A stretch of DNA of 64,000 bases from Convolutriloba macropyga. Its lineage: Eukaryota. Below, piece after piece: positions 11,897 to 49,170 of this stretch (position 1 is its first letter; each line of letters starts with the position of its first letter). The stretch covers positions 73,594,001 to 73,658,000 of the forward strand of contig NC_134473.1 of NCBI RefSeq assembly GCF_964194025.1, given 5' to 3'. Under the pieces are notes generated by a model. That model saw nothing but the letters and a program-made list of their open reading frames with translations, was not told where the DNA came from and did no database searches. The position numbers and the translations under genes are program-made.

Positions 11897-11928
<32 letters not shown>

Positions 11929-12017
11929 AAAAAAACTAAATATCAGAAAGAAAACTTTTTGTGCTTTATTTTTTTGTTTACATTTTCTTTTCAAATGTTG
12001 CTATTTGTTGCCGGGAG

Positions 12018-12281
12018 TGTAAAGGAACCAAGTTCCTTTATATTTTATCTCTCCCCACACCCTCATTTTCCTCCCCCACCTACACTTTGGTCCTCCAAAA
12101 CCCATTCATTTCCTGATTTCAATTCCCCCAACCTATTTCCATTGAAGCTATTTATTTAAGTTGATATTATTGAAGAAGTCAGAAGTGGTTGACATTCACT
12201 TTCAATATTATTTATAGTAAGGGATTTCCCGTTTTAACAACAACTTGTGTGCCAATGGCGCGGATTATGATGTATTTATAG
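12018..12281 (+). repeat. Truncated 3' LTR of copy A, preceded by PPT-like GCCGGGAG
   Basis: Matches the first ~264 bp of the 5' LTR, then breaks into the inverted LTR. Confidence 0.9.
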
Positions 12282-12611
12282 GGAAATCCATTACTATAAA
12301 TAATATTGAAAGTGAATGTCAACCACTTCTGACTTCTTCAATAAAATCAACTTAAATAAATAGCTTCAATAGAAATAGTTTGGGGAAAAGGAAATCAGGA
12401 AATGAATGAGCTTTGGAGGACGAAAGTGTAGGTGGGGGAGGAAAATGAGGGTGTGGGGGAGATAAAATAAAAAGGAACTTGGTTCCTTTACACTCCCGGC
12501 AACAAATAGCAACATTTGAAATGAAAATGTAAACAAAAAATAAAGCACAAATTTTTCTTTCTGATATTTAGTTTTTTTATGTGTGTGTGTGTGTGTTTCA
12601 ATGAACTTGTT

Positions 12612-28689: not shown

Positions 28690-29132
28690 GAAGGGGACCG
28701 GCCTCTGATATCAGCTGGACTCATTTTTCTGATCACAGCTATCAGACTTTAGATAAGTCTCTGATCAGAACGCTGCTTTATTGTTGCCTCTTGGCAGAGC
28801 CAACATCTCTCAGTAAAAAAAAACAAAAAAATGAAAAAAAATAAGGCGCTCGAAATGGTCCCTGATCAGACCCAATTGCTTTCGAACACATTTCTGATCA
28901 GACCAAAGTGCACTCGAAGAGGTTATGATCAGACCCAATTGCGCTCGAAATTGCCTCTGATCAGACTTTTCAGACCAAATTGACCTCTGATCAGACCATC
29001 TCCAGACCATGGTCCAGACTGTAGTGCGCTCGAACTTCCGTCCAGACCCTGTAATTTCGGTCTGGGAACACTCGAGTGTGCGCTCGACTGGGTCTGATCA
29101 TAAACCAATTTGGGTCTGAACCTCAACCTGGG
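28690..29132. mobile_element. CCCAGG-family element end with ~32-bp subterminal repeats (GCGCTCGAA-n-TGATCAGACC)
   Basis: Ends CCTCAACCTGGG; related pieces at 19540-19700, 31435-31575 and 34360-34455. Confidence 0.65.
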
Positions 29133-30455
29133 TCTTGATGCCTTCTTCAGCTTGGCGGCTAGGTTTGCGTGCTCATTTTTTGCGCTACCAAAATCAGGTT
29201 TTCCTTGGTAAAATGTTTTTTTTGCACAATTGCATTAGTGTCTATTTCAGTTTTCAACCCAACTTTTTAATCAGCTCCAGTTTATCCCTTCTATCCCAAT
29301 TTGTCTGTTATCAATATCACTGTTATACATGTCAGAGATTCCTTTCGAATCCATCCAGTTATTATAAATTACTTAGAATCAATTACTGCGAAAGAATTTC
29401 GAAGATTCCTATCTTTGCTTCCTCTGGTACATAAATCAGCCAAATTTAGAATAAGAGGGGTCGGATCATTATGGGTAAACGCACATAACCGGGCCTTCTT
29501 GCCCTATAAATTATCCTTTTGAAAAAAAAAATCATCATGGCTCAGCAAAAAAAATTAGTTTTTTTTTTTAAGATTAAAAACGAGTATCAAACTTATTGCA
29601 GCACATAAGCGAAGCAGTTTTTTTCCGAAATCTGCACCTGCGAGGGGGAAATGTAACAGCTAAACAGGTAAAATGCAGCAACTGATGTAATATGCCAAAG
29701 CAATGATTATGGGAAGGTTGAAAACTGGTGGATGTAAAACAATTAGAAACAGAAAATTATTTGCTTTCGAAAACTGTGTTCAATGCTAAAATCTATTGAT
29801 ATTGACATTTTTCTGACCAAACTCAGTTATTCTCGAAACACTTGTAAGTAGAGCAAAACTTTTTTTAAATAAATACAGAATGAAGCATTTCAAAATAAAC
29901 TTTGAAAGCAACGACTGATGTTTTTTCAATACATTTTTTTAGTGGATACCCCGTTTGTCATTGTGTCTGACGTCATGTATGATCCCCGTATGATTACTAA
30001 GAAGTGACAACCCGTGTTGAAAATATTCTAAAAAGAGTTTTCACGAGAACAGACAAACTTCGCTTGATTTTATGATCAAAACCTGTTTCGAGCGATATTT
30101 GACTTCTCACTTTTGTTCAAAAAACGTTTCAATGATAACCGCCAAAAACATTTCTTTTCTCTGTCATTTTTTCATGCTGAATTAATTCATCAAAATCAAA
30201 ATTCATTCAAGCTTTCCTAATTATTTCAACCCGAAATTGACACCTGTGGATGATCAGCTGACCTTTATCAACAGCCTTTTTTGTGCCTTTTACCCAGAAA
30301 CTGTTCTGTATTTGGTTGTATTAACTGCAATTTATAAACTTTGAAATTTACAGAATATTCAAGCAAATTAGCACCCTATACTTTTACAAAGTAAAAATCT
30401 AATTTTTGACGCAAAGTTACTCCAATTTGAAATCACTTATTTAAAAAAAATGCAA

Positions 30456-30620
30456 GGATCTATTCTGTTTTGCCCCCCCCCACCCCAGCTTAGTGGACTC
30501 ATATTTTTACGCCCCCGGGCTCACGTGCTATTTTTTACATAGTAACGTGCTATATAACAACTTATAATTTGTAACTGGGGGGCGTAAAAAACAATGGGGG
30601 GTCCAAAACAGAATAGATCC
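30456..30620. mobile_element. 165-bp MITE, Merlin-like
   Basis: Perfect 17-bp TIR GGATCTATTCTGTTTTG; 8-bp TSD AAATGCAA/AAATGCGA (1 mismatch). GG termini with an 8-9-bp TSD fit the Merlin superfamily. Confidence 0.78.
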
Positions 30621-30753
30621 AAATGCGATGGTCATTCACTAAGCTAGTGACCTTGTCTAGGTGTGGTTTTGACTTAAACGTAAGACTAACTATAACCAGA
30701 TATCCTATTGTCAAAAACCAAAATTAGATTTTTTACTTCGTATAAAAACTAAA

Positions 30754-30910
30754 CCCCCCCCCCCCCCCCCCCCCCCAGCTTTGAGCATAAATTTTTTATG
30801 ACCCCCCCCCCCCACGTGCTATTTTCCTACATAGTAACGTGCTATATAACAACATATAATTTGTAATTGGGTCTCATAGAACACACTGGGGGGGGGGACA
30901 GAATAGATCT
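30754..30910. mobile_element. Second copy of the same MITE lacking its left TIR
   Basis: Same internal sequence (cacgtgctatttt...acatagtaacgtgctatataacaac) and right end ACAGAATAGATCT. Confidence 0.7.
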
Positions 30911-31022
30911 ATTAGATTTTTACTTCGCATAAAAAAGAATAACTTGGTATAAAAACAAACAGGGTAAAACTTTAGGGTGCTAACTTGCTTCTGATGCTTA
31001 GTAAACAACGTGGTATAGAAAA

Positions 31023-31320
31023 ATGTGCAACAAACCGATATCTCTATGTTGCATTTTCGTCGTGAACTTGGTAGCCCTATTATTATGCGTGGTTGCATTC
31101 AGCTTTACAATTTGGGCACACTCGACCAACAAACTGGACATTCTCCAAGGGGTTCCGGGTCTTGAGTTGAAAGCGAAAGATGTCGACACCATCTACTATG
31201 TTGCTTATGGGATTTTTGGGGGACTTGCAGTGGTCTGTATAATTGGAATTGTTGCGTGTTGCTGTTGCCAGAAATGCTGTATGACAGTTTATGCAATTTT
31301 GGTAATCATCATAAAAATTG
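31023..31320 (+). CDS. Tetraspanin exon 1 (TM1, EC1, TM2, start of TM3)
   Basis: ATG at 31023, GTGAGT donor at 31321; MCNKPISLCCIFVVNLVALLL...ACCCCQKCCMTVYAILV. Confidence 0.9.
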
Positions 31321-34300
31321 GTGAGTTTTTGTTACATTTTTGGTTCCAATTACTGCCAAATTATCGGCGGCCAGTTCGAGGTAGCCAGACCGATGTGACT
31401 TCTAATCACACCGTCTTTGATGGTATATGCGTACGATGCGCTCGAATTACGTGGTCTGGAAAATGCTCCAAACGCATTCTAGTCTGGACAATGGTCTGGA
31501 ACTTGTCTGACCAGAAGTCGCCTGTCTGGCACGGTCTGATCAGAGACGATTTCGGTGTGGACCTCAAACTATAGACGAGGCTTTTCAAAAAAAGGATATT
31601 GACAATAATCAATTTTTACGATCTTTAACAAAGTTAAAGTTTTCAATAGCTTTTCTTTTCATGGTAAATATGCATTTTTTCTGATGATTATCTTCGTGAA
31701 GTTGTACAATCAATTTTTTTTCCAATTTTAGAGGAACCTAGACATTACCACCACAAAATTAAATGAAATAAATTTAAAAAGAAATTGGTCACGGTAAACC
31801 GCTTGTTTTTGAAGAGCGCCAACTGCTTAGAATATGAAAGCACGCAGCTAAGAATACAATTTCGCGATTTTGTTTTAATAACGAGCGTACTAGGTTCTAG
31901 AAAAGTGTCCTTTTAAATATATTTAATTATTTGATTGTTTGTCATTCAGGTAGATTGGTAATCTAAATTGAAGTTTAAATTTTTAGCAATGATAGCGCTG
32001 TTCATTGGGTGGATAATTGTGTTTGCAATTGCAATTGTGAAACTAGAAGGTCAACTAGGTGACCTCCTCCTGAAATACCAGTCGGAGTACGCCACCAACA
32101 AGGAGTCCATTGCCACTAATCTTCTTCAGGTATTCAAGTCAACCCAAAATTGTTCCCGAAATGGCTAAAGATGATTTAAAATTTTTTGACTGAGCTTATT
32201 GTATTCAATTCATAAATTAAAAGTTTTCAGACCTCTTAAATATGACTTGTTGAACCGATTTTTTGCCTCAACTATAATTACTCGATTCTAGCAAACTTCA
32301 TTGAGGACCCGTTGAAAGTGTCATCCAAAAGTTTTACAAAAGTTCGTGCATCTGTATGTGTCTGTTAAAGAATCATTGCGAGAAAACTGTTCACTTTTTT
32401 TCTATTAAAATTTCACAATAACAACGAACTGATCCAACATAAACCGATTGTCTTGTCTATTTTATTTGTGATTTTATTTAATTTATTATATTTATTAATA
32501 GCCGCACAGCGATAGCTGGGGCTATTATTGGCCTTCTCGTGGTTTTTTACAATTCAAAAAATTTTTACAATTCATAGAATTTGAATTGTTTTGGGGCGCT
32601 GTCTTTTTTTAAGATCTGTTCACACATTTTCATGATTTTTGAAGTCAAATTGGAGTAGTGATTTTGGTCACGCCGAAACAAGAAGTGGAGCGAAAAAGCG
32701 AGTGGTTTTGCGGCGTGAATTTGTTTTGCTCTATTTTTAAAGTAGAGTGCGAAAATGGTGTTTGAACAAAAATTCGGTTTCTTGGTAGTGGTTTTTTGTT
32801 CACATGCGGCAATTTCACTCTGATTTTTACTGTTTTTTCAATTGTTTGGATTGCATTTTTTCTAAATGGTTTTCCCAATCCATTCAAAGCTCATTCTAGG
32901 CCTAGTTTTTTGTTTGAAATAAATTTTCATTTCTCGCTAATGGTTTTTTTCTCTTCACATGCGGCAATTTGACATTGATTTTTTGGTTTTTTTCCTATTT
33001 TTTGATCTGATTTTTTTATAAATGGTTTTCTCAAATCAGTCATAGTCCATTCTTGGTCTGGTTATTCTGTTTAGTCAATGAAAATTCTTTGAATTGTACG
33101 TCAGGACTTGTCCTGCTATGTTTTTTTATTTCGCCGTCGTGATTTTTGTTACGACCATATGACGTCACAGCCACTTTTTGTTCCTTCGTTCATGCAATTT
33201 CAACTGAATTGCATGTGTCACGCCATTTTTCGCTCTTAGTGGAGCGAATTTTTTTGTTCATGCGCGTGATTAATTTTTTGGTCACACTTGACTTACCTCA
33301 CTCTCGAAAATAACTTCCTCACTTTGAAATTGACTTTTGTTTACTTTAATTCAAAGAGAAAAGGTCAAATGGGTGTGTGTCACTCTAAATGAATTTTATT
33401 TGAGATCAGCTAATAGAGGCATCAATAATTTATTTATTGCTCTCAAACGAAGTTTGTTGCAATTATATTAGTCCTCTTGGTCTTTTTTTATGCGACTTTT
33501 CGTTTGACCGATTTTTGTCTGACGCTTTTGACTTTTCGTCCTCAAAAACGAGATAAACAGGTAGCACCCAGCGGACATTAAGTGCTCTTAGGGTCTGTCA
33601 GCTCTGTTTCAGCTCAAACTATTTTGGAGACTCATACTTATACACATGGTGTGAAGGGCGTTTCTCAGAGGTTGAAGACACCCTCACTGTTGACCCCCCT
33701 ATTGCCCCAATCCCCCCAGTGTGCTGTTGCCAGCCCACCCCGGTGTTGCCCACCAATCAGCCCCCCCCCCCCCCCCCCCCCCCCCCCCCGTGGCCAGCTA
33801 CTGACGAATAACCGCTTGCAAAAAAAACGCAAGTTTATGAAATTTTGCAATTTTTTCAAGCTTTTTGAAAATTTTTGACATTTTTTTGATTTTTATCAGC
33901 CCTAGGTGTCAAGGAACCTCCTCTACGTTCTAAAAATAGGTTACTACGCGTAGTTTCTAGTGGTAATGTAATGGTTTCGACGTTTTTCCATCACGAATTT
34001 TAGCATTTCTCTGACAAAACGTGCAATTTTTTTAAAATTTTTTGACATTTTTTTTCTTTTTTCAGGTCTTTCTAGACCCAGGGGCCAGAAAACATCCTAT
34101 GGGGTTTAATAATAGGTTACTGACAAATTTTTAATGGTAATTGAATATCTTTCCAACATTTTAAAGTCACAAATTTTAGCAAATTTTTGATAAAACTTGC
34201 TTTTCATGTTTTTTTTTGAATTTTTTTGCCGTTTTTTAGCTTTTTCAGCCTTAAGAAACAAGGAACCCTCTCTAGGGTTTGATATTAAGTTTCTGAATAA

Positions 34301-37300
34301 TTTTTAGATTAAATGGAAGTTCGTGCAATATCTTTGCATCACGAATTTTAGCATAATTTAGTCTGGACAATGGTCTGGAACATGTCTGACCAGAAGTCGC
34401 TTCAGTCTTGGACGGTCTGATCAGAGACGATTTCGGCCTGGACCTCAACCTGGACGAGGCTTTTCGAAAAAACGATATTGACAATAATCAAATTTTACGA
34501 TCTTTAACAAAGTTAAAGTTTTCAATAGCTTTTCTTTTCATGGTAAATATGCATTTTTTCTGATGATTATCTTCGTGAAGTTGTACAATCAGTTTTTTTT
34601 TCCAATTTTAAAGGAACCTAGACATTACCACCACAAAATTAAATAAAATAAATTTAAAAAAAAATTGGTCACGGTAAACCGCTGGTTTTTGAAGAGCGCA
34701 AATATGAATATGAATATGAAAGCACGCAGCTAAGAATACAATTTCGCGATTTTGTTTTAATAACGAGCGTACTAGGTTCTAGAAAGGTGTCCTTTTAAAT
34801 ATATTTATTCATTTGATTGTTTGTCATTCAGGTAGATTGGAAATCTAAATTGAAGTTTGAATTTTTAGCAATGATAGCGCTGTTCATTGGGTGGATAATT
34901 GTGTTTGCAATTGCAATTGTGAAACTAGAAGGTCAACTAGCTGACCTCCTCCTCAAATACCAGTCGGAGTACGCCACCAACAAGGAGTCCATTGCCACTA
35001 ATCTTCTTCAGGTATTCAAGTCAACCCAAAATTGTTCCCGAAATGGCTAAAGATGATTTAAAATTTTTTGACTGAGCTTATTGTATTCAATTCATAAATT
35101 AAAAGTTTTCAGACCTCTTAAATATGACTTGTTGAACCGATTTTTTGCCTCAACTATAATTACTCGATTCTAGCAAACTTCATTGAGGACCCGTTGAAAG
35201 TGTCATCCAAAAGTTTTACAAAAGTTCGTGCATCTGTATGTGTCTGTTAAAGAATCATTGCGAGAAAACTGTTCACTTTTTTTCTATTAAAATTTCACAA
35301 TAACAACGAACTGATCCAACATAAACCGATTGTCTTGTCTATTTTATTTGTGATTTTATTTAATTTATTTTATTTATTAATAGCCGCACAGCGATAGCTG
35401 GGGCTATTATTGGCCTTCTCGTGGTTTTTTACAATTCAAAAAATTTTTACAATTCATAGAATTTGAATTGTTTTGGGGCGCTGTCTTTTTTTAAGATCTG
35501 TTCACACATTTTCATGATTTTTGAAGTCAAATTGGAGTAGTGATTTTGGTCACGCCAAAACAAGAAGTGGAGAGAAAAAGCGAGTGGTTTTGCGGCGTGA
35601 ATTTGTTTTGCTCTATTTTTAAAGTAGAGTGCGAAAATGGTGTTTGAACAAAAATTCGGTTTCTTGGTAGTTGTTTTTTGTTCACATGCGGCAATTTCAC
35701 TCTGATTTTTACTGTTTTTTCAATTTTTTGGATTGGATTTTTTCTAAATGGTTTTCCCAATCCATTCAAAGCTCATTCTAGGCCTAGTTTTTTGTTTGAA
35801 ATAAATTTTCATTTCTCGCTAATGGTTTTTTTCTCTTCACATGCGGCAATTTGACATTGATTTTTTGGTTTTTTTCCTTATTTTTTGATCTGATTTTTTT
35901 ATAAATGGTTTTCTCAAATCAGTCATAGTCCATTCTTGGTCTGGTTATTCTGTTTAGTCAATGAAAATTCTTTGAATTGTACGTCAGGACTTGTCCTGCT
36001 ATGTTTTTTTATTTCGCCGTTGTGATTTTTGTTACGACCATATGACGTCACAGCCACTTTTTGTTCCTTCGTTCATGCAATTTCAACTGAATTGCATGTG
36101 TCACGCCATTTTTTGCTCTTAGTGGAGCGAATTTTTTGTTCATGCGCGTGATTAATTTTTTGGTCACACTTGACTTACCTCACTCTCGAAAATAACTTCC
36201 TCACTTTGAAATTGACTTTTATTTACATTAATTCAAAGAGATAAGGTCAAATGGGTGTGTGTCACTCTAAATTAATTTTATTTGAGATCAGCTAATAGAG
36301 GCATCAATAATTTATTTATTGCTCTCAAACGAAGTTTGTTGCAATTATATTAGTCCTGTTGGTCTTTTTTTATGCGACTTTTTGTTTGACCGATTTTTGT
36401 CTGACGCTTTTGACTTTTCGTCCTCAAGACGGGATAAACAGGTAGCACCCAGCGGACATTAAGTGCTCTTAGGGTCTGTCAGCTCTGTTTCAGCTCAAAC
36501 TATTTTGGAGACTCATACTTATACACATGGTGTGAAGGGCGGTTCTTAGAGGTTGAAGACACCCCCACTGTTGACCCCCCTATTGCCCCCATCCACCCAG
36601 TGTGCTGTTGCCAGCCCACCCCGGTGTTGCCCCCCAATCAGCCCCCCGTGGCCAGCTACTGACGAATAACCGCTTGCTAAAAACGCAAGTTTATGAAATT
36701 TTGCAATTTTTTTCAAGCTTTTTGAAAATTTTTGACATTTTTTTGATTTTTATCAGCCCTAGGTGTCAAGGAACCTCCTCAACGTTCTAAAAATAGGTTA
36801 CTACGCGTAGTTTATAGTGGTAATGTAATGGTTTCGACGTTTTTCCATCACGAATTTTAGCATTTCTCTGACAAAACGTGCAATTTTTTTTAAAATTTTT
36901 TGACATTTTTTTTCTTTTTTCTGGTCTTTCTAGACCCAGGGGCCAGAAAACATCCTATGGGGTTTAATAATAGGTTACTGACAAATTTTTAATGGTAATT
37001 GAATATCTTTCCAACATTTTAATGTCACAAATTTTAGCAAATTTTTGATAAAACTTGCTTTTCATGTTTTTTTTTGAATTTTTTTGCCGTTTTTTAGCTT
37101 TTTCAGCCTTAAGAAACAAGGAACTCTCTCTAGGGTTTGATATTAAGTTTCTGAATAATTTTTAGATTAAATGGAAGTTCGTGCAATATCTTTGCATCAC
37201 GAATTTTAGCATAATTTTGATATTTTTTGCATTTTCCCTATTTTTACATTTATAGTCATTATTAAGATTTGTTGAGCCTCAAGGGTCAAAAAAATCTCCG

Positions 37301-40300
37301 TTTGGTTTTGATAGTAAGTGATTTAAAAATTTTGTTGGTCATCGATTAATTTTCAAATTTTTAATATCAAATTTTAGCAATTTTTTTTAAAACTTGCAAT
37401 TTTTTCAAAGTTTTTGGAATTTTTTGTCATTTTTTAAGTTTCTCTAGCCACAAGGGCCGCAGAATTTTTTGTGGGGTTCAATAATATGTTACTGCATAGT
37501 TTATAGATGGCAATGAAATGTTCTTCAAGATTTTAATATCATGAATATAAGCAATTTTTCAAAATTATTTGCAATTTTTTGCTGCAACAGAGGCCCTGGG
37601 ACCTCCAAATTTTGATAAATAGCGGCTGCCTTTTTTCTAGAGTTAATGGGATTGTGATCACCATTTTTTAAAGGTCTAATTTTAGTAATGTTTAAAAGCT
37701 TGAAAACTTTTCGTTTTAAAATTTAAACTTTTCAAATTTTTGGCAAATTTTATGGATCTTTACGAGCCAGTAAAACTATTTCAGGCTTGCAACAGGGACA
37801 CTGGACAGTCTCTTGAGACAATGAAATGGTTTTTAAGATATTAATGTCTTGAATTTTAGCAAGATTTTTTAAAATTTGCAATTTCCAAATTTTTTCAATA
37901 TTTTTTGTCCTTTTCTGAGTTTAACGACAAAAATGGTTTTGATTTTTTTATTGCGGAGTTCAAAACTCTTTCAAAAGTTTCTGTTGATTTTGCCTTTTTC
38001 ATCTTTTTTTTCTATATTATTTATTTATTAACAAGGTTAGAAAACTAGAAGTTGCAGTGTCGAATCCAATCATGAAAGATATTTCTGTCTCCTTCTCTCC
38101 CTTTCGGTTGGGGTTCCTTTCCTTCTCTTTGTCATTCACGTTTTATCTTTTTGTTGATTCCGCACTTCAGCTGCTGTTATTTGGCGTAATGTCACCATCT
38201 CTGATCAATGAGTTATAGTTGAATTGTTGTTTATCATATATGATCTAATATGCACTTTTAGGAAACCATTGTTAATTGCTCTCAAAAGCAATTTGTAGCA
38301 AATGTATTAATCCTGTTTGTCTTTTATGCAATTTTTCTCTTCGCGGATTTTTCGTCTGACTCATTTGACATTCGTATTCAGAAACGGCATAATGAGGTAG
38401 CGCCCTGAGGAAACTAAACCGTGGCTCGCTGTTGAGGAAGCCAACCGCTCGCCGATCGTTTGAGAGCAATTCGCCCGACGTTAGTCGGTTATGTTACAGA
38501 TTTTTAATCAAATTATAACAGGTCAGCCTTCAATGAAAAGACGAATTTTTTTGGTCTGTCTTTTTTACTGTTTTTTTAGACGGGCGATCTACGAATCTAT
38601 TGCGGCTATTTTGTGGCAATCTGCCAGCTATGTTTCATTTGTGATTCCAATGCATTCATCACTATTGAACAGTAATAAATGCATATATTGGCAATTATTA
38701 TGAAACTTTACAATTGCATTACTGCCTCAATTTTTTTTGCTGAAAAATAATTTTTGACAGAATGAAACTGAAAAGAACCCGGAGCCGTTAATTGTTTTAA
38801 ATCAGCTCTGATTGATGAAATTCAATTAGTAAAATTGTTTTTCTGCACAATTCTAAGTGTGCAGCATCCTAGGGGTCCCGAGTCTTAATAGAATGTCAAT
38901 CTTGCACGATAATGTAAGAATTTTGCACAAAAATTGCATAGTCTTGCACGATTTTCTCTCATGATCTTGCAAGATTAACATCCAAAAAAATTCCGAAAGA
39001 AAGCCAAAAAACTGCCTAAAATACTCAAAAATACGAAAAAAGAACTTTTAAAATATGCTGCAGCCTAAAGCGTGCCCACCCGGGTTGACCACCATAAATA
39101 AATCTTGGCAACCATATCCAAGCCATATATGGTGACCAAGAAAACTTGGCAACCATATACCTGACCACACGAAATTTCAAACTTGAGGCTGAAAAAGCGT
39201 GAAATAAGTGCCTCTGACGTATTCTGGTGGTGAAAAGTCTCGGTTGAAACTTTGAAAAAATTTCAAGTTCATGGTTTCTTGGCAACCATATATATGGCCA
39301 TAAACGTTCATGGTGCCATGGATGACCATATATGGAAAAATTTAAATCGGTCCGCGCATTTAACTCAGATATAAATTTTTCAAAATTTTAATGTGTTGAC
39401 TTTAGATTGTGTTTGGTGCGTGTGGAGTGGATGGTTCGCAAGACTACAATGATGGACAGAAGACTCCTGAGTGGCAGAAAACGAAGAAAGATAAAAAGCG
39501 CAACAGTCTCAGTTAGTATACTCTGTACAAAACGCCACTCTTTTGTCAACACCCCCCCCCCCCCCCCCCGCGCACCGGACCTAGCGGATATATTTTGATT
39601 TCCACAAAGGCGTGAAAATGCAAAATTTTAAACCATATTTATTCTCGTTCAAACAGCTTAGACTGCTTTCGAAATGTCCGATTTTGACGGACAGAAACGA
39701 AAGCAACTCAACTTAAAATTAGAATCCAGCGAATAGCGTGTATACAATTCGCCCGACATTATTCGGTTATTTTGTTTAATTTTTGATAAGAACAAGTTCA
39801 TTTATCAAATTGTCATGCCATGAATTAAGTTTAAAAAAAAACAATCACTGTTGAAAATTCTTGGCCTCATAGTTTAAGATACATCTGACTTTTTAAGATA
39901 CATTAACTTATTAATTGATCTCGAGCGAAGTTGGTAGCAATTACTGTAAACGTGTTGGACTTTTTATGCATATTTTTGCTTGACCACTTTGCGTTTTTCT
40001 TCTAGAGTATTCTTCGACTTCTCAAGTGACTTTTTCACGAGTTCGTTCTAAATTTTTGAGTGATCTCGACTGCTCTCCGAAGTACAGCTTGTTGCTAAAA
40101 TAAAATCGATTTCACATTACGTTTTTAAAAACGTGCAAGTAAATTTACCTACAAAATCAGCTAATTTCAATTTAAGAATTCGTACAGGTAAAAATTCAAG
40201 AAACTTTAAAAGTGTTATAAAACTAGTTTAAAGATAAAAAATCTGAAACTACGGTTCGTTTCTTTCCAGCTTTGGAAAAATCATTGGGAAACGTCATGGA

Positions 40301-43300
40301 ATCGTCTTTCATATCTGAAGAGACAAACTACAAATTATTTTTTTCACGCTTATTTTTCCATGAAAATTTTTGCTTCACATTTATGCATCAAAAGCACAAA
40401 AAAGTTGCAGGTAATTTACCTGAATATTGTACAGGTAAGCAGTTTCGGGAAAAATTTTGCAGGTAAATTTTGCCTGCACAAAGCTTTACCTGCACACTGT
40501 TCAGGTAAATTTGCCTCAACCTTTTTATTTGCTCACGTAGTTGGGTTTTGTATTAGTCCTGTTGGTCTTTATTTTATACGATATTTCGCTTGACCGATTT
40601 TTCGTCTGACTCATTTGACTTCAAAACTCCAGAAAAACAAGATAAACTGGTAGCACCAAGCAGGCATTAGGTTTGATTAGAGGCCCTTAGCCGCGTTTAT
40701 TAGTCCTTCAAGTGCTTAATGTGGTGAAGCTACTGTGAAAACCGTAGTTAAAAGGTCATTTTAGGAGTTTTGAGCCCAAAAGGTTGCAAATTTTTGGTGT
40801 TTTTAAGTCATCTTTAATAGCCGCGAAGCGATAGCGGCTATTATTGAGGACACCGTGTTTTTTTTAACCCGTCGTCTCCATCGATAATTCTTACGTGACC
40901 TGACTTCTTGAAATTGATTTTTTCAGTGACTTCATTGACCTCTACTGTCTTGCGGTTAAAATTTGTTTTCGCGACGTCATTTTTGCTTTTAGGCCAATTG
41001 CGTGACTTGCATCACTCAATAAATGACTTCTGAACTTATGCAACTCCAAATATTATGAGCATTTACTAGTTAATAGTGTGCATCTAAGTGGTGCCAAACT
41101 TATATGCCCTCATTCTTGATTATTAGTCTTGAGTTTTTGATTACGAATATAATTTTTGAAAAAGCTTTTTTCGGGCTTTTTCCTTCAAGGCCTAGGTGTC
41201 ACAAAACTGACAGTCCGGCTTTAACCCAAAAAGTTTAGTGGTCTATTAAAAGACTGGTGGTCGATCTGTCAATCTTAATGCTTTAGTTCTTTCAATTCAT
41301 GGAAGGACATAAGCGTCTATCACGGCTATTTTCCGGCAGTCTGCCGGCTATGTTTAAATTTTTTGGTAGACCAGACTAAAATTGAGGCAGGTTATATTTC
41401 ATAACGGTCAGTCGCAAGAGATAATACGGTTGGTCAATAAGTTACTGAAAAAATTTTCTTATGTGCATGGATTAGTTTTCACTTTTTTAATATCACAAAA
41501 AACTTTTGTTTTTATGTTTTACTAGACTCAAGAGCCAAGGAACCTCATCTAGGTTTTAATACATACTTTCTCGATGTTGTAAGTTATTTTTCAAGATTTC
41601 AACATGACGAATTATAGAGTTTTTTGGCAAAATTGCTATTTCGTTTCAAGTTTTCTTGATTTTTTTTGGGTTTCACTAGCTTCAAGAGCCAAGGGACCTC
41701 CTCCAGAGTTTGATAATAGGTTATTTCATAGCTTTAAGATGTAATAGAATGTTTTTGAAGATTTTAATATCACGACCTTTTTCATCTTTCTACAATATTC
41801 GCAATTTTTTCAAAAATTTTTTATATTGTTCTCAAACGAAATTGGTAGCAAATATTTTAGTCCTGTCAGTTTCTTTTTTGATGCCATCTTTCGCTCGACC
41901 CATTTTTTGTCTGACGCTTTTGACTTTTCGTCCTCAAAAATGGGGTAAACAGGTGGCGCCCAGCGGGGATTAAGTGCTCTTAGAGCCTTTCAGCTCTGTT
42001 TCAGCTGAAACTCTAACCTATACTTATGTGTGGAGGGTGGTTCTTGGAGGTTGAAGACACCACCACTGTTGATCCCCCACCTTTGTCCCCATCTCTCCAC
42101 CACGCTGTTGCCCCCACCCCACTGTTGCCCGCCCACCTCTCCCTACCCAGCAGCCCCCGGTGCACATCCCCCCGTGGCTTCTGACGAACAACCGATCGCA
42201 AAAAACACGAAATTTTATACTAATTTTCACATCTCTTTCAAGATTTTTGAAAATGTGTCATTTTCTGAGTTTTTCAACCCCAGATGTCAAAGAACCTCCT
42301 CTAGGGTTTTACAATAATTTACTGCATAGTTTCTAGTGGTAGTGGAATGGATTCAACATTTTAATATCATGAATGTTAGCATCTTTTTGACAAAAAACGT
42401 GCAAATTTTTTTAACTTTTATTCATTTATTTTTAATTATTCACGTCTTTCCTGACACAGGTGACAAATAACATCCTTAGCGGTTTGATAATAAGTTACTG
42501 AAAAAAATTTTTTTCACCATGAAATAGCTTTCAATTTTTTAATCTGACAAATGTTAGCAATTTTTTTTATGTAACTTGCCATTTGTCAATTTTTTCCGGC
42601 CTCAAGAGCCGAGGAATCTCCTATATAGTTTGAAAAAAGGTTACTGCATAGTCTCTAGTGGTAGTTGAAAGGTTTCAACATTGCAACATTACGAATTTTA
42701 GCATCCTTTTGAAAAAACGTGCCAATTTTTTCATTTTTTAGACTTTTATTCTCTTAGACAATTTTCCACATGCAGTTGCCAGAAATCGTCCTGAGGGGTT
42801 TGATTATAAGCCTTGAAAATTTTTCATTTGCCATTCAATTGCTTTCAATTTTTTAATGACAAATTTTAGCATTTTTTTTTTAGAAAACTAGCATTTTCAA
42901 GTTTTTTGCAAATTTTTTAGGATTCTCCAGCCTCAAGAGCCAAGGAGCCTCCTCTAGGGTTTAACAATAGGTTACTCTACAGTTTCTGAATGACATGAAA
43001 TTCAAGATTTCAACAACACGATTTTTCTCAATTTTTTTTTTTACAAAACTGCCGATTTTCTATTTTTTTTCCATTTATTGTCGTTTTTCAGGCTCTTCTG
43101 TCTAACAAAAAATCTCCCTTAGGGTTTGATAATAAGTTGCGGGAAAATTTTTTTGGCTTATGATTAGTTTTCTTTTTTTTATACGAAATTTTTGCAGTAA
43201 TTTATGCAACTTGCAATTTTCATTCAAATTTTTTGAAATTTTGTTGCCATAAATTTAGGTTTCTTCAGCTTTAAGAGCCCCAGAAGCTCCCCTTCGTTTC

Positions 43301-45944
43301 GATTATAGGTTACTGCATAGCATCTAGTTGTAAAGGAAAGTTTTTTGATTTTATTATCAGCATTTTTTAAAAAAAAAATGCAATTTTTCAAGTTTTTTTT
43401 TTAAATTTTTATAATTTTTTCCACCAGGGTGTTAGCGACCTTCTCTAAGGCTTGATGATAAACTGTTCAATAATTTCTAGAGTTAATGGAATGATTATCA
43501 ATATTTTAATAACTACAGTTTAACCAATTTTTCGATAAAATTTGATTTTTTTTTTGAAATTTTCGGAAAATCATTGTCACATTCCAAATTTATGGATCCT
43601 TATGAGCCAGTGAAACTATTTAAAGGTTGAAATAGGGATACTGGTTAGTCTCTTGAAACACTAAAAGGGTTTTGAAGATTATAATGTCTTGAATTTTAGC
43701 AGGATTTTGTTAAAATTTGCGATTGTTGTCATAATTTTTTTAAATATTTTTGTCCTTTTCTGAGTTTAACAACCATTGCAGGCCAATGAAACTTTTCAAT
43801 CCTTGGCATAAATCCTGAATACAAAATATCTTTTTGAACTTTTCACTGCGAAGTCTGGAAGCTTTTATTTTAAGTTCTGCAACATTTTGCAAAATTTCAA
43901 AGTAACTGCTTTTATTGGATTTGTTTACTAGCAAGGGTAGAAAACTAAAAGTTGCCGAGTCCAATGAGTCTGAAGTTAGACTAACTAAACCATGGCTAAC
44001 TACTACTACTGACGAAACCAACCGCTCGCCGGTTGTTTGAGAGCAATTTGCCCGATGTTAGTCGGTTATGTTTAAATTTTTGATTTGTTTCAAATTTTAT
44101 CTGGCACCAGGGGCCCAGACACCTCCTCCAAAGTTTAATACTAAGCTGCTGCATAGTTTCTGGAGTTCAATGGAATGGTTATCAACAATTTAATGTGTTG
44201 AGTTTTTGCAATTTTTGATAAATTTTAACTTTTTTCAAATTTTTGGAAAAAAACTATCATGTTCTGAGTTAATGGATATTTGAGCAAATGAAACTAAATA
44301 ATTCTTGAAATGGGGATACTGGATAGTGTCTTGATACAATGAGATGGTTCTGAAGATATTTATATAACATTTTTTGGCAAGTTTTAAAAAAAATTTCAGT
44401 GTAACTCGTTTTTCTGAGTTTAACGATCATCACTGGCAAACGAAACTCTTCAGGTCAGGCAAAAGGATTACATGACAGAGCTCCAGAAAAAGAAAATGGT
44501 CTTGAACTTTTTTCACTGCATTATATGGAAATTTTTCTACTGAATTTTGCATTTTTCAATTTTTTTCTATTTGATTTGATTAATAACAAGGCTAGAAAAC
44601 AAGAAGTTGCAAAACTAGAGTCGAATCTCATCACGAAAAAAAATTCCTAGCTCTTATTTTCTCTCTTTGTCTGTTGGAATTTTTTCCTTCNNNNNNNNNN
44701 NNNNNNNNNNNNNNNNNNNNNNNNNNNNNNNNNNNNNNNNNNNNNNNNNNNNNNNNNNNNNNNNNNNNNNNNNNNNNNNNNNNNNNNNNNNNNNNNNNNN
44801 NNNNNNNNNNNNNNNNNNNNNNNNNNNNNNNNNNNNNNNNNNNNNNNNNNNNNNNATGCCGCACATCAGCTGCTGTTATGCGGTATGGTGTCATCTTCTT
44901 TTACCCTCATTAACGCTGAGTTTTAGTGGATTGTTTCTATCACAAATGATTTAACCAGCACTTTTTAGTAAATCGGATTTTATTCGTCTCAAACGATGAT
45001 TGCAGCAATTACAATGGTTTTTTAATGCAATTTTTCGCTTGAACGGTTGTTGTCCAACCCATTAGACTTTTTGTTCTCAGAAATGGGATAAAGAGGTAGC
45101 GCCCAGTGGGCATTAAGTTCTCTTATAGCCTTTCAGCTCACTAGTCTCCTAGTAAGTGATTAACTGTTTTGGAGACTTTTACTTATGGTGTGTAGGGTCA
45201 ATCTTAGAAATCGAAACCCCTCATCAGCCCCCCCAGTCCCCACTCCTGCACATCGGTCGGGCCGTATGGCCATGCAGCCAAAGATCCCATTCCACCGTTG
45301 CCCCCCCCCCCCCCCCCCCGCTGAGTTCATCTCAAGTCCCTTCATTTAAGCTAAAGCTAGCCTCACTAAACCGTGGCTACCTACTGATGGAGCTAACTGT
45401 TCACCGGTCGTTTGAGAGCGATTCGCCCGACATTAGTCTGTTATGTTTTAGTATAGCCAGTTTACGTTATTATTTCTAACCCTAACTCTACTTTACAACA
45501 AAAATTAAGGCCTTAGCGAATCTCTCAGCAAACTAAGTAAAGATAAAAGAAAGTAAGCAAGATGAAAATATCCCATATTGATTATTTTTAGAAGACTACA
45601 ATTTCGACTATCCTCTAACTTGCTGCGCTGGCTTGGACGACGTGAAGGACCTCACTGATACCATCAAAAATGACAAATTCAATTCGTTCAATGCCTTACA
45701 AAAACTTGTTAACGAACACAAAACTACCTTTGACCAATGCAAGAAAAATCCCCCGGACGAGGGACTGGCCAAGAAGATTAAAAACTTTCTCGGAATTGTA
45801 ATGGGTATCGGTTGTGCTATATTTGTGTGTATCATAATACTGTTGATTCTTTTGGTCTGTGCGGCTTGTAACGTCATCAAGAAAGGACCCAAAAAAGACA
45901 AATGGAGCAAAAAATATGAAGGAAAAGAGGGCGGAGACAAGTAG
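31023..45944 (+). CDS. Divergent tetraspanin, 299 aa: join(31023..31320, 31987..32129 or 34869..35011, 39406..39511, 45592..45944)
   Basis: All GT-AG junctions are phase compatible (298+143+106+353 = 900 nt). Four hydrophobic segments, TM1 Asn, Cys-rich small inner loop, EC2 with LQ...ACG...DY and PLTCC, basic C-tail. Confidence 0.88.
31987..32129 (+). CDS. Tetraspanin exon 2, copy a
   Basis: tttttAG acceptor, CAG|GTATTC donor, 143 nt, phase 1->0; MIALFIGWIIVFAIAIVKLEGQLGDLLLKYQSEYATNKESIATNLLQ. Confidence 0.85.
34869..35011 (+). CDS. Tetraspanin exon 2, copy b
   Basis: Same splice sites; differs by GGT>GCT (G>A) and CTG>CTC. Confidence 0.85.
35379..38635 (+). mobile_element. Helentron-type non-autonomous element, family 1 (5' part duplicated at 32497)
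   Basis: Head AATAGCCGC...GGCTATT; tail GCGGCTATT + hairpin TGGCA-ATC-TGCCA + GCTATGTT. Head, middle and tail are shared with 46906-49170. Confidence 0.65.
36318..38495 (+). mobile_element. Helentron-type element, family 2, nested in family 1 and carrying a ~165-bp repeat array
   Basis: Perfect 15-bp subterminal IR ATTGCTCTCAAACGA (36318) / TCGTTTGAGAGCAAT (38456), then hairpin CCGAC-GTTA-GTCGG. Absent from the family-1 paralog near 49030. Confidence 0.7.
39406..39511 (+). CDS. Tetraspanin exon 3 (IVFGACGVDGSQDYNDGQKTPEWQKTKKDKKRNSL)
   Basis: ctttAG acceptor, GTTAGT donor, 106 nt, phase 0->1; occupies the CCG-motif position. Confidence 0.85.
40813..41355 (+). mobile_element. Compact complete Helentron-associated element (HINE-like)
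   Basis: AATAGCCGC with adjacent IR GCGGCTATT at the head; CGGCTATT + hairpin CCGGCAG-T-CTGCCGG + CTATGTTT at the tail; T-rich flanks and no TSD. Confidence 0.72.
41824..44072 (+). mobile_element. Family-2 Helentron-type copy with about nine diverged ~165-bp repeat units
   Basis: Head attgttctcaaacga; tail gtttgagagcaat + ccgat-gtta-gtcgg; unit core cctctagggtttgataataggttactg...gaattttagc recurring 42290-43700. A further partial copy runs to 45448. Confidence 0.65.
44691..44855. other. Assembly gap (165 N)
   Basis: Run of N inside a repeat copy paralogous to ~38095-38160. Confidence 0.99.
45592..45944 (+). CDS. Tetraspanin exon 4 (PLTCC, rest of EC2, TM4, C-tail, TAG stop)
   Basis: attatttttAG acceptor, phase 1; in frame with ORF 45633-45944. 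Confidence 0.88.
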
Positions 45945-46905
45945 TTGTAGGAAAAAAATTGGCAGAAAGACACAAAATGCGCTTATGACGTGGAGCTACA
46001 GAAAGTACCGAGACCCCCCCCCCCCCACCACCCCCGCCCCCTCCTCCCTCACTTCTACTTTTCCCAAGTCCAACAATACTTCCTGACGTTATCTTGTATT
46101 CTAAACTTTTAATAATGGATCAGTTCAGATCCAGAGAAATTGATCTAACAAGATCTTGTAAGAGTTACATAGAAAGAATGCATTCTTTCAAGTAGAAAAA
46201 GTGCAAAAATTTCAGGGTTGACAATTTCAGATCACATTTTGATGCTTGTAGTCAAAATCAAATACTGGGTCAAATATCATAATTCTAATCGAATCCGATT
46301 AGATTAGAATTATGATATTCTAATCTGATATATTTCCTAACAAATTAAGGCTTTCTAACAAATTACATATTTGCATTCATTAAAATGTCGCAAGCACTAC
46401 CAACTTTTTTAATGTTGGGGTTGTGGGTGGGGGCGTGGGGGGCTCCTGTAGTGCAGTAGCTCCATAATCCCTTGTATGTAGAATGCATATAAGAGCTGAA
46501 TTTCAAATAATTTATATCTTTAGATCCAGTGATTTCTTATTTTAAAGTTCCGTTAAATGTTTGTTGATTTTGCAAAATAATACTGTTTTGTTGAGATAAT
46601 TTGTTGAGATCTCTCTTTGAATTAAATATTTGGGCTGTACTATTTTCTTTTCAGTTTTGGAGCAACTAGAGATGTCCATTTATAGAGTTTTGTCCAATAT
46701 AGACGAAATCCCGACAAGTAGAAAACAAATTCTACTACAATTTTTTCGAGTAAAGTGCTTACTGTCATTTTTACCGGCTTAAAGTCATTCATTTCTACTT
46801 TTTCTATTTGAAGGTAGCACAAATAAAAATATAAAATATTCCTGCAGCTTAAATAGAAAACCGAGGATTAAATTTTTGCGGTGGAAGTAAAAGATTTTCA
46901 TTATT

Positions 46906-49170
46906 AATAGCCGCACAGCAATAGCTGGGGCTATTATTGGCCTTCTCTTGGTTTTTTTACGACCCGAAGAGGAGCATTGGTTTCCTTAAGGTTTTTTTTT
47001 ACCGGAAGTACTATTCGTTCAGACAATGTTTTGACCTAAAAGCGAAAGCGAGTAAAATTGCAGTGTGAACTAATTTTTTCTGAGCGAGAGAAGTTTTTTG
47101 ATCATGCGCTGCGTTTAGTGAATGACTTTTTGACATTGAAAAGTAGTTTTTGACTGAATGGCACATATAGATAACCGTTTTTAGCCGTTTTTCGTCTAAG
47201 TGGCCGTTTTTTTGCTTGTAATTTGGTTTTTTGTAGAAATAATTTTTAATTGATGCTATGTTGAAATGTAAACCCCGGAAATTGATAGCACAGTTTTTTG
47301 CATAGCCTGAAATTGCGTTTCAAATGCAAAACTGGCACATATTTCTTGATTTTTTAGTTGATTTTTGGCTTTTTTTTCTATTAATTTCTCCATTTTTGGA
47401 TTTTTTAGCTGTTTTTTGTCAAAAATCAGTTAATATGGCAACTTCCCTTTGATAATTCATATACTCAATGCCTCTTTCTACCTCGATGTAGTTTTATTTC
47501 ATAAAATTGTACATTTGCTAATCTGATTTTCGTAGTTTTATATACTAGAAATGGTATTTTGGGGAACACGAGGGACTTTAATTTCGTTTCAATAAAAAAT
47601 CAATCATTTTTTGGTGTTAAGTTTTTGAAAAAACAGATAAATTTTTTTCATAAATGCAGTCTTAAATATTTTTTGACCACTTTTTTGCAGAATGTTTCAT
47701 TGTTTCGTATGTCTGAATTCTGCTTTTTATTGTTTTATTCTGTTCAGCAAGTAGGATTTTTATTTTTGTCTCGAATAACTCGTTGTCTTTTCTATGTCTC
47801 GAATGCTGATCAATGAAATATACTCGTTTTTCTTGATTTTTTTCAATTCGATTTTTAACTTTCAAAAATCAAGAATTGGTCTTTTTGTTACGGTGTTCCT
47901 AACATTGTGTCCGTATTCTCCACATTCTCGTTTGTATCATTCTAGTTATGTCCTGCCACCTACTTTTGTGTTCGTTATATTGATTTTTTCAGTTGTTAAA
48001 AAATTGAATGAATTCAGATTTTTCTCAGATCTTGGTTTCTTCGGTTTGCAATTGATTTAATTCAAAATAAGGCAGTACTGGGAGTTTGCTAGAGAGTCTT
48101 TTCCAACATTTCGACTTATTACTATTTATTGCAATTTTCTCCGGGCTTGGTATTGTTTTTAGACGATTGTTTGCCTTTGAATATTATTCTGTTGCTTTTG
48201 TTTTTCTATGGTTAATTTAATTTTTGAATTAGTATGAAATCATGTTGTCTAGCATATATACAACAAGGAAGAATCATGTATTATTGTTGTCTTAATAGCC
48301 GTGATTTAAAATCTAATTGTAGGGGTTCTCTGATTCTTAAGTTTGAGCACTCTGTTTTGAATAATTTTGACTTTCCTGTCTTTTTTTGAAAAGTTTTTAT
48401 CTGCCGTTTGCTTTCGCGATCTTTTTGAGATTAGAATTATTAATTATCTGAGGGCAATTGATGGCCCTGTCAGCTTTGTCAGGCTATCAGTTTTTTGATC
48501 ATCCTAAAAATTTCAGACTTCTTAACGTTACCAAACGTTTTCAATAATAAAACTTTGTTGCGTTTTCTTCCTCTTGGTGACAGTGGTTTAAATTTTACCG
48601 ATCTTTAGATCAGACCCGCGGAGGTAATGAGTTAGTGGTTTAATACAAAAGGTAATGGCTTCAGCTTTTTGTGACGTTTTGGTGCTTCGAGTCGCTTCCG
48701 GAATTCTTCCGGCTATGTTTTTTATTTCGCCGTCATGATTTTTGTTACGACCATATGACGTCACTGCCACTTTTTGTTCATTCGTTCATGCAATTTCAAG
48801 TGAATTGCATGTGTGACGTCATTTTTCGCTCTTAGTGGAGCGAGTTTTTTTGTTCATGCGCGTGATTAAATTTTTGGTCACACTTGACTTACCTCACTCT
48901 CAAAATTGACTTCCTCACTTTGAAATTGACTTTAATTTAATTTAATTCAAAGAGATAAGGTCGAATGGGTGTGTGTCACTCTAAATGAAGGTTATTAGAG
49001 ATCAGCTAATAGAAGCAGCAATAACTTATATATATTTTTAATCAAAATATAACAGATCAGCCCTCAATGAAAAGACCAATTTTTTTGGTCCGTCTTTTTT
49101 ACCGTTTTTTTTTAGACGGCCGATCTACGAATCTATTGCGGCTATTTTCTGGCAATCTGCCAGCTATGTT
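46906..49170 (+). mobile_element. Helentron-type element, family 1 paralog with a different internal insert
   Basis: Same head as 32497/35379; shared block 48712-49030; tail GCGGCTATT + CTGGCA-ATC-TGCCAG + CTATGTT. Confidence 0.65.

What the first reader, a model, noticed from the sequence alone, without database searches (positions are those of the whole stretch)
39406..45944. Tetraspanin that has lost both cysteines of the family-defining disulfide (CCG->ACG and EGC->EGL)
Seen: the spliced EC2 reads ...NLLQ|IVFG-ACG-VDGSQDY...YPLTCC...FDQC...DEGLAKKIKNFL-TM4, with GCG in place of the first CCG Cys and CTG where the TM4-proximal 'GC' Cys belongs. Known: in tetraspanin EC2 the first CCG Cys bonds to that last Cys (CD81 C156-C190), and the usual six-Cys pairing is C1-C6, C2-C3, C4-C5. 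Inference: exactly one bonded pair was removed and four pairable Cys remain. Both changes need more than one nucleotide substitution and the ORF is intact, which fits a functional tetraspanin with an unlatched head domain better than decay or base-call error. CCG-based screens would miss it.
Basis: partly seen in the sequence, partly recalled or inferred. Interest (0 to 1): 0.78.

Follow-up and report, generated by a model that had tools for sequence, protein, structure and literature searches.

The report
Acoel tetraspanins lacking the CCG disulfide
This is a real, expressed membrane-protein gene of the acoel worm Convolutriloba macropyga, and it belongs to a whole lineage of tetraspanins that has lost, together, the two cysteines of a disulfide bond usually described as universal in this family.

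Summary
The window (Convolutriloba macropyga, contig C6) holds an intact four-exon tetraspanin gene at 31023-45944, encoding 299 aa. Exon 3 reads FGACG, with GCG at 39418-39420. Exon 4 reads DEGLAKKI, with CTG at 45765-45767. Pfam PF00335 matches the full length (62 bits).

A 97%-identical second copy on contig C1763, annotated by NCBI with the same splicing, carries both changes. dN/dS between the two copies is 0.09. RNA-like contigs end exactly at the borders of exons 2 and 3.

The assembly gap lies in intron 3 and touches no codon.

An exhaustive HMMER search shows a clade. All 16 closest full-length relatives lack both Cys1 (xCG) and Cys6 (Gx). About 66 more distant hits have both. The clade includes a Symsagittifera roscoffensis orthologue and at least 11 loci in this genome, against about 19 canonical loci. 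With the two trait columns removed, the clade is one branch (SH-aLRT 98), sister to canonical acoel tetraspanins.

The solved PRPH2 structure confirms the pairing C1-C6, C2-C3, C4-C5, so exactly one bond is gone. I read this as one ancestral paired loss that selection has since maintained. What the loss does to the protein is untested. The scan had not recorded this elsewhere.

The parts
31023..31320 (+). Exon 1: start codon, TM1, small loop, TM2, a Cys-rich inner loop (CCCCQKCC) and the start of TM3. Donor G|GTGAGT, phase 1.
   Evidence: PF00335 matches profile positions 3-102. The spliced model is in frame. It is 99% identical to residues 1-99 of NCBI protein P0002.
31987..32129 (+). Exon 2, copy a (143 nt): the rest of TM3 and helices A/B of the large loop, ending ..NLLQ. 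Its two diagnostic letters are the ones seen in the RNA-like run.
   Evidence: The X1 contig laid on copy b carries G at 34941 and G at 34954, which are the copy-a letters.
34869..35011 (+). Exon 2, copy b (143 nt), three nucleotides and one residue (Gly to Ala) different from copy a. Including both copies would shift the frame.
   Evidence: A DNA contig of run X2 matches it with no differences (record 9).
31480..37217 (+). Head-to-tail tandem duplication of 2.9 kb (31480-34359 and 34359-37217, 96.8% identical) that carries exon 2. The C1763 copy has only one exon 2.
   Evidence: Self-BLAST. Single exon 2 match on C1763.
39406..39511 (+). Exon 3: IVFGACGVDGSQDY plus a Lys-rich variable loop. 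Ala152 (GCG, 39418-39420) replaces the first Cys of CCG. Acceptor cttag|, donor A|GTTAGT, phase 1.
   Evidence: X1 contigs of both alleles (depth 30 and 21) end exactly at 39511. At the 5' side they run on only into six letters that resemble the end of exon 2 (records 7 and 8).
39512..45591 (+). Intron 3 (6.1 kb as assembled), full of dispersed repeats. It contains the assembly gap at 44691-44855.
   Evidence: No tetraspanin-like ORF and no CCG tripeptide in any frame of 29000-47500 apart from the five exons. Gap position.
45592..45944 (+). Exon 4: DYNFDYPLTCC (Cys3, Cys4), FDQC (Cys5), DEGL (Leu241, CTG at 45765-45767, in place of Cys6), helix E/TM4, a basic tail and the stop at 45942-45944.
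   Evidence: The codons are the same in the C1763 copy.

Best explanation
The locus is a working tetraspanin gene of the acoel Convolutriloba macropyga. It is a four-pass membrane protein whose large extracellular loop descends from the common six-cysteine type (CCG..DY..PxxCC..C..GC).

In an ancestor of an acoel gene clade, the first Cys of CCG and the Cys of the 'GC' motif before TM4 were both lost. In canonical members these two form the disulfide that ties the turn after helix B to helix E. The clade then diversified to at least 11 loci in this genome without ever regaining either Cys.

The four remaining loop cysteines (153, 193, 194, 232) are invariant. By homology they form the C2-C3 and C4-C5 bonds. 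The variable 'head' would then stay stapled, while its link to the helix E/TM4 stalk is held only by non-covalent packing.

Shown: the gene model, its expression, purifying selection, the paired absence across the clade, a single origin on the tree, and a confidently predicted tetraspanin fold.

Inferred: which cysteines pair, and any gain in flexibility or change in partner binding.
For: - Sequence and splice model.
- PF00335 matches the full length at 62.2 bits, E 7.5e-17, profile positions 3-223 of 225.
- The NCBI model LOC142356217 for the C1763 copy is 299 aa and residue-for-residue the same as my splice of that copy.
- Between the two copies there are 17 synonymous and 6 non-synonymous differences, giving dN/dS 0.09.
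- In run X1, contigs stop at 35011 and at 39511, whereas contigs of the DNA runs cross those borders.
- The exhaustive HMMER search gave 98 hits. The alignment shows 16 rows with neither C1 nor C6 and about 66 rows with both. The only exceptions are three truncated or misaligned rows that have C1 without C6.
- Named members come from C. macropyga and Symsagittifera roscoffensis.
- The genome census found 11 xCG loci and about 19 CCG loci.
- On a tree built without the two trait columns, the xCG rows are one side of a branch (SH-aLRT 98), next to canonical acoel tetraspanins.
- The AlphaFold2 model has mean pLDDT 84.5 and pTM 0.79, with 92-95 around both substituted positions. Its top fold matches are PRPH2/ROM1, uroplakin Ia/Ib, CD53, CD81 and CD9.
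- The disulfide pairing in a solved 6-Cys member is given in PMC9645710.
Against: - No experiment shows which cysteines are bonded in this protein.
- The tools return no model coordinates, so I could not check whether residues 152 and 241 touch.
- Run X1 is not on record as RNA. I judged it RNA-like from its size and from contigs that stop at exon borders.
- The exon 3 to exon 4 join was not seen directly in reads. It rests on the NCBI model, the reading frame and colinear homologues.
- The paired absence is one evolutionary event that was then inherited. It is not many independent covariation events.
- The supporting tree is the quick search; the careful search did not finish.
- Most non-Convolutriloba members come from unnamed short contigs, so 'acoel-specific' is not proven.
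Confidence: 0.85

Rival explanations
1. The loss has no functional consequence. The C1-C6 bond had become dispensable in this lineage, and both Cys were lost by drift, the second quickly after the first because an unpaired Cys is harmful. The loop keeps the same shape and dynamics through ordinary packing. The clade's expansion would then have nothing to do with the loss.
For: The residues now at the two positions vary freely: A/T/S/G/V/K at C1 and L/I/S/G/T/V at C6. There is therefore no specific compensating pair. AlphaFold2 predicts a standard fold with high confidence at both sites. A paired secondary loss has a precedent: CD53 lost Cys 4 and 5 (PMC2965184).
Against: This pair is invariant in every other full-length hit. 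In the tabulated vertebrate large-loop cysteine patterns, every listed subtype keeps CCG and a final Cys (PMC2965184). Nothing here tells neutral maintenance from adaptive maintenance.
Confidence: 0.35
2. The four remaining cysteines pair differently from the canonical C2-C3 and C4-C5, or one of them forms a bond between molecules, as Cys150 does in PRPH2. The loop would then be re-wired rather than simply missing one staple.
For: No bonding data exist for this protein. The loop carries a 20-residue Lys-rich insert of low model confidence (residues 171-190, pLDDT 63-72).
Against: All four Cys sit in the invariant columns of canonical relatives, with the same spacing motifs (xCG, PLTCC, C). An even number of Cys leaves none free.
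Confidence: 0.08
3. It is a decaying pseudogene, or an artefact of assembly, base calling or gene modelling. For example, the true CCG exon could be hidden in the N gap.
For: The locus has an assembly gap and a tandemly duplicated exon. Continuity across the gap was not tested.
Against: - Two genomic copies have the same changes and intact ORFs, with dN/dS 0.09.
- An RNA-like contig matches exon 3 exactly. Its single listed difference falls in the six letters before the exon.
- The exons cover the family profile without a hole, and there is no other tetraspanin-like ORF in the locus.
- The same two substitutions define a clade with an orthologue in another genus.
Confidence: 0.02

Closest known systems
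Animal six-cysteine ('6-cys-a') tetraspanins: CCG..[DN][WY]..PxxCC..C..GC (for example CD151, CD63, TSPAN3/6/7/18, PRPH2, uroplakin Ia/Ib; classification in PMC2965184)
   Same: Four transmembrane helices, a PF00335 match over the full length, and the motif order xCG-DY-PLTCC-C-Gx-TM4. The predicted fold matches PRPH2/ROM1, uroplakin Ia/Ib, CD53, CD81 and CD9. The nearest canonical relatives are acoel 'tetraspanin-7-like' and 'tetraspanin-18-like' proteins.
   Different: Cys1 (the first C of CCG) and Cys6 (the C of GC) are both absent in every clade member, so the bond equivalent to PRPH2 Cys165-Cys250 or CD81 Cys156-Cys190 cannot form. Every vertebrate large-loop subtype in that classification's table keeps CCG and a final Cys.
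CD53, a tetraspanin that secondarily lost a cysteine pair (PMC2965184, Table 1)
   Same: Two bonded cysteines were lost together from a six-Cys ancestor, leaving a working four-Cys tetraspanin.
   Different: CD53 lost Cys 4 and 5, the extra bond inside the variable head, and keeps CCG and the final Cys. The acoel clade keeps that extra bond and lost the pair that every tabulated vertebrate subtype retains.
Fungal tetraspanin-like Tpl1 proteins (PMC2278132)
   Same: Four-pass proteins related to tetraspanins that lack the CCG-based cysteine pattern.
   Different: Tpl1 lacks the whole pattern and keeps only two Cys, near TM3 and TM4, and it is treated as 'tetraspanin-like'. The acoel proteins keep four of the six canonical Cys, match PF00335 and branch next to canonical acoel tetraspanins.

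Membership tests
Tetraspanin superfamily (Pfam PF00335) | Significant match to the family profile over the whole protein | tested here: met
   62.2 bits against a cut-off of 32.1, E 7.5e-17, residues 9-275 on profile positions 3-223 of 225. Exon 1 alone scores 34.9 bits.
Tetraspanin superfamily | Four transmembrane helices, a short first loop, a large second loop between TM3 and TM4, and the tetraspanin fold | tested here: met
   AlphaFold2 model: helices 4-36, 51-81, 84-128 and 241-280, with loop helices 138-150 and 201-234, pLDDT 84.5. Foldseek's best eight matches are all tetraspanins.
Tetraspanin superfamily (motif definition used in the literature) | Cys-Cys-Gly motif in the large loop | tested here: not met
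   The window copy reads Ala-Cys-Gly (GCG TGT GGA, 39418-39426). The same holds in the C1763 copy and across the clade (xCG, or GCA in one member). The protein is therefore a homologue that fails the motif definition.
Tetraspanin superfamily (motif definition) | A conserved Cys shortly before TM4 (often 'GC') that bonds to the first Cys of CCG | tested here: not met
   Leu241 (CTG, 45765-45767) sits in the GC column. Gly240 is kept.
6-cys-a subtype | PxxCC motif plus one further Cys, forming the C2-C3 and C4-C5 bonds | tested here: inconclusive
   The motifs are present and invariant: P190, C193, C194 and C232. Whether they are bonded is not testable with these tools.
Acoel xCG clade (defined here) | Branches with the other xCG/Gx sequences, apart from canonical tetraspanins | tested here: met
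   One side of a branch, SH-aLRT 98, with the trait columns removed. The nearest named relative outside the species is S. roscoffensis LOC134846757, 54% identical, reading FGACG.

The most novel reading that the evidence does not exclude
Losing the C1-C6 staple may have changed how these proteins work. With the head no longer tied covalently to helix E/TM4, the large loop could swing more freely over the transmembrane bundle, which would be an exaggerated form of the open/closed switch proposed for CD81 and CD53. That new behaviour might have driven the expansion to about a third of the acoel tetraspanin repertoire. If so, the clade is a natural knockout series for a bond that mutagenesis treats as indispensable.
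Probability: 0.15. Interest if true: 0.7.

Novelty: new variant of a known kind. Interest (0 to 1): 0.5.

Why it matters
Reviews and gene-family surveys use CCG and its partner cysteines as the signature of tetraspanins. A constrained, expressed and expanded clade without that bond bears on three points.

- The C1-C6 disulfide is not strictly required for a tetraspanin to persist under selection.
- Motif-based surveys undercount tetraspanins in acoels. About 11 of roughly 30 loci here would fail a CCG filter, and NCBI leaves four of the five annotated members found here unnamed.
- The clade offers paired natural material for asking what the bond does for loop dynamics, folding and partner binding. 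Clade members can be compared with their canonical sisters in the same animal.

The scope is modest. This is a lineage-specific variant of a well-known family, not a new kind of protein.

Tried and rejected
- Sequence search of solved structures with P0002 gave only marginal hits (best E 0.073, uroplakin). It was useless for residue-level alignment.
- Word-indexed homologue searches added almost nothing. Exon 1 found 2 proteins. The clade profile found 5 within the 8000-candidate limit. P0018 found 3. The taxonomic reach beyond Convolutriloba and Symsagittifera therefore stays open.
- The assembly GCA_013332895.1, which holds P0008, could not be tied to an organism. A paper search for the accession found nothing.
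- Literature searches for tetraspanins 'lacking the CCG' found only fungal Tpl1, excluded Entamoeba candidates and L6-family proteins. They found no animal clade like this one.
- Gap continuity: the 250 nt to the right of the gap match a diverged repeat at 38157-38405 (68%), and the left flank matches nothing. This gives no test.
- The 'careful' tree did not finish in time; the quick tree is reported.
- In the first tree I wrongly labelled P0109 as xCG. It is canonical (HCCG...KGC). The label was corrected.
- An alternative exon 1 donor at 31301|GTAATC (phase 0) was rejected. It breaks the frame with exon 2 and disagrees with the NCBI model.

Full report
**What is there.** The window is contig C6, 73,594,001-73,658,000, of a 1.18-Gb genome. 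Protein matches identify the genome as the acoel Convolutriloba macropyga.

After an acceptor cttag|, an exon starting at 39406 encodes IVFGACGVDGSQDYNDGQKTPEWQKTKKDKKRNSL. An exon starting at 45592 encodes (K)DYNFDYPLTCC...FDQCKKNPPDEGLAKKIKNFLG, followed by a transmembrane helix, a basic tail and a stop at 45942-45944. Ala152 is GCG at 39418-39420 and Leu241 is CTG at 45765-45767.

**Gene model.** The stated range holds only the last two exons. Upstream ORFs supply two more:
- Exon 1 (31023-31320): start codon, TM1, TM2 and the start of TM3, with donor G|GTGAGT.
- Exon 2 (143 nt, ending ..NLLQ|gtattc).

Joining exon 1, one exon 2, exon 3 (39406-39511, donor A|GTTAGT) and exon 4 gives a 900-nt ORF of 299 aa with GT-AG introns throughout.

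Exon 2 occurs twice, at 31987-32129 and 34869-35011. It lies inside a perfect head-to-tail duplication, 31480-34359 and 34359-37217, that is 96.8% identical. Using both copies shifts the frame, so only one can be used.

**The assembly gap.** The only N run is at 44691-44855. It lies in intron 3, 5.2 kb after the exon 3 donor and 737 nt before the exon 4 acceptor, so no codon crosses it.

I could not test whether its flanks are continuous. 

The gap does not matter for the protein, for three reasons:
- A profile built from 74 tetraspanins is covered end to end by the four exons, with no missing segment.
- No other ORF in any frame of 29000-47500 resembles a tetraspanin or contains a CCG tripeptide.
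- The relatives P0003 and P0005, found on short contigs of 1.4-1.6 kb, are colinear across the exon 3/4 join.

**Is the gene real and in use?**
- Pfam PF00335 matches exon 1 alone at 34.9 bits. It matches the full protein at 62.2 bits, E 7.5e-17, over profile positions 3-223 of 225.
- A second copy sits on the unplaced contig C1763 with a single exon 2. Its exons are 94-98% identical in DNA.
- That copy also reads GCG TGT GGA and GAG GGA CTG.
- My splice of the C1763 copy is identical to NCBI protein LOC142356217 (P0002, 299 aa), so NCBI's pipeline reached the same four-exon model.
- The two copies differ at 17 synonymous and 6 non-synonymous sites, giving dS 0.10, dN 0.0085 and a ratio of 0.09. 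This indicates purifying selection, whether the copies are alleles or a recent duplicate.

**Read evidence.** Four public runs hold exon 4, and none is on record as RNA. Run X1 has only 80 Mb of contigs. One of its contigs ends exactly at 35011. Two more, one per allele, at depth 30 and 21, span 39400-39511 and end exactly at the exon 3 donor. Their six extra letters at the 5' side are explained by the resemblance of cttTag to the end of exon 2 (CTTCAG).

The three Gb-sized runs have contigs that run across these borders into the introns (table 8). I therefore treat X1 as RNA-derived, and conclude that exon 3 is expressed and spliced at the predicted sites from both copies.

The X1 exon 2 contig carries the two letters that are diagnostic of copy a. 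Copy b exists in DNA contigs but was not seen in X1 (tables 3 and 8). The exon 3/4 joint could not be seen, because both exons do not fit into 6000 letters.

**The cysteine pattern.** The large loop has exactly four Cys: 153, 193, 194 and 232.

In every alignment Ala152 falls in the first-Cys column of CCG. Leu241 falls in the Cys column of the 'GC' motif, with the preceding Gly240 nearly invariant. The DQC Cys falls in an invariant Cys column of its own.

PRPH2 has Cys165-Cys250, Cys166-Cys213 and Cys214-Cys222, and ROM1 has the same pattern (PMC9645710). Exactly the C1-C6 pair is missing here. The CD81 numbering (Cys156-Cys190) comes from my own knowledge of Kitadokoro et al. 2001, and I could not find it spelled out in the library.

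**It is a clade, not a one-off.** An exhaustive HMMER search of 1.84 billion representatives with P0002 gave 98 hits.
- Among full-length sequences, the 11 best representatives and their cluster mates (16 rows) all read xCG (A, T, S or G, and GCA in one member). All have a non-Cys residue (L, I, S, G, T or V) in the GC column.
- About 66 further rows have both Cys.
- Only three rows have C1 without C6, and they are truncated or misaligned.
- No row lacks only C1.

Named members are four more C. macropyga genes: LOC142350108, LOC142353166, LOC142357801 and one called 'CD82 antigen-like'. There is also Symsagittifera roscoffensis LOC134846757, 54% identical and reading FGACG. The rest come from short unnamed contigs.

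Six-frame searches of the genome with the clade profile and with PF00335, followed by alignment of the exon ORFs, found 11 distinct xCG loci and about 19 canonical CCG loci. Wherever the last exon was recovered, it agrees with the CCG-region exon. These counts are lower bounds.

**One origin.** A tree of 13 xCG and 39 canonical sequences was built with the two trait columns removed. It puts all xCG rows on one side of a branch (SH-aLRT 98). Next to them is a group of canonical proteins that includes C. macropyga 'tetraspanin-7-like' (P0035) and S. roscoffensis 'tetraspanin-18-like' (P0099) (an earlier version is).

This is the quick search; the careful one did not finish. Within the clade, pairwise identity falls to about 24%, so the paired absence has been kept through long divergence. 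Because it is one inherited event, it is not statistical proof of covariation. The point is that neither Cys was ever regained alone.

**Structure.** AlphaFold2 on the 74-row alignment gives mean pLDDT 84.5 and pTM 0.79, with four long helices and loop helices. Confidence is 92-95 around residues 152 and 241, and low only in the Lys-rich insert at 171-190. Helix 241-280 starts at Leu241, where the GC Cys of canonical members sits at the start of helix E. Foldseek's best matches are PRPH2/ROM1, uroplakin Ia/Ib, CD53, CD81 and CD9. The tools return no coordinates, so I could not measure whether residues 152 and 241 are in contact.

**Mechanism.** Shown: a constrained, expressed tetraspanin that cannot form the C1-C6 bond. 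Inferred by homology: Cys153-Cys193 and Cys194-Cys232 hold the variable head, and the head is joined to helix E/TM4 only by packing.

The residues now at the two sites vary freely across the clade, so there is no specific substitute interaction such as a salt bridge. Whether the loop is more mobile, or whether the bond was simply dispensable, is open. I put the neutral reading at about 0.35 and an adaptive, function-changing reading at about 0.15.

**Comparison with what is known.** The motif order matches the '6-cys-a' class, CCG--[DN][WY]--PXXCC--C--GC. The same paper records that CD53 secondarily lost Cys 4 and 5, so paired loss has a precedent. Every vertebrate large-loop subtype in its Table 1 keeps CCG and a final Cys, and its Figure 1 legend calls CCG the tetraspanin signature (PMC2965184).

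Fungal Tpl1 proteins lack the whole pattern and are called tetraspanin-like (PMC2278132). Surveys use CCG as an inclusion criterion (PMC6895871; PMC4592607). My searches found no description of an animal clade without the CCG-GC bond. The library is incomplete, and the key paper on cysteine-pattern evolution (DeSalle et al. 2010) is not held in it.

**Verdict.** The finding is a new variant of a known family. It is of moderate interest to tetraspanin and acoel specialists and useful as a natural experiment, but it is not a new kind of system.

Noticed in passing
window 31480-37217: A perfect head-to-tail tandem duplication of 2.9 kb (96.8% identical) doubles exon 2 of the tetraspanin gene. The C1763 copy has one exon 2. 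Three exon 2 versions (a, b and C1763) exist in DNA contigs, and the one RNA-like contig carries the copy-a letters. Copy b may be skipped, rarely used or mutually exclusive.
   Followed up: partly
G000:C1763:227047-237024 (minus strand; loci L002, L009, L014, L017): A second full copy of the gene lies on an unplaced 378-kb contig, with dS about 0.10 against the window copy. Its intron 2 is about 1 kb, against 4.4-7.3 kb in the window. Both copies appear expressed. It could be a divergent haplotype or a recent duplicate; I did not resolve which.
   Followed up: partly
window 45864-45923 (protein residues 274-293) and relatives P0003, P0005, P0006, P0007, P0013, P0016, P0022, P0054: A strongly conserved cytoplasmic tail follows TM4: AAC-x-V/I-I/L-K/R-K/N-G-P-K-K/E-D-K-W/Y/F-x-K-K/N-Y. 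It is conserved in one sub-branch of the clade, even where the loops have diverged to 30-45% identity. It looks like a binding or sorting motif.
   Followed up: no
window 39440-39450 and 45592-45602: The same 11 letters (AAGACTACAAT, encoding D-Y-N) occur inside exon 3 and at the very start of exon 4. The relative P0003 also has two D-Y motifs there, so this may be a conserved peptide feature or chance.
   Followed up: no
window 5495-17342: Broken ORFs on both strands match Pao/BEL retrotransposon peptidase, reverse transcriptase and integrase. The composition skew flips near 13 kb. Observed only.
   Followed up: no
window 35350-36550, 38330-38730, 39924-40122, 40521-40700: Intron stretches with summed contig depths up to millions in the DNA runs, and hundreds to thousands in the RNA-like run. 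They are very abundant dispersed repeats, some apparently transcribed. Long poly-C tracts also flank several of them (for example 39551-39570 and 45301-45320).
   Followed up: no
G000:C8:12434736-12436125 and G000:C5:59250633-59252024: Two near-identical two-exon xCG tetraspanin loci (SALETCGVN ... SEGT) lie on different large contigs. This suggests recent inter-chromosomal duplication within the clade, or an assembly duplicate.
   Followed up: no
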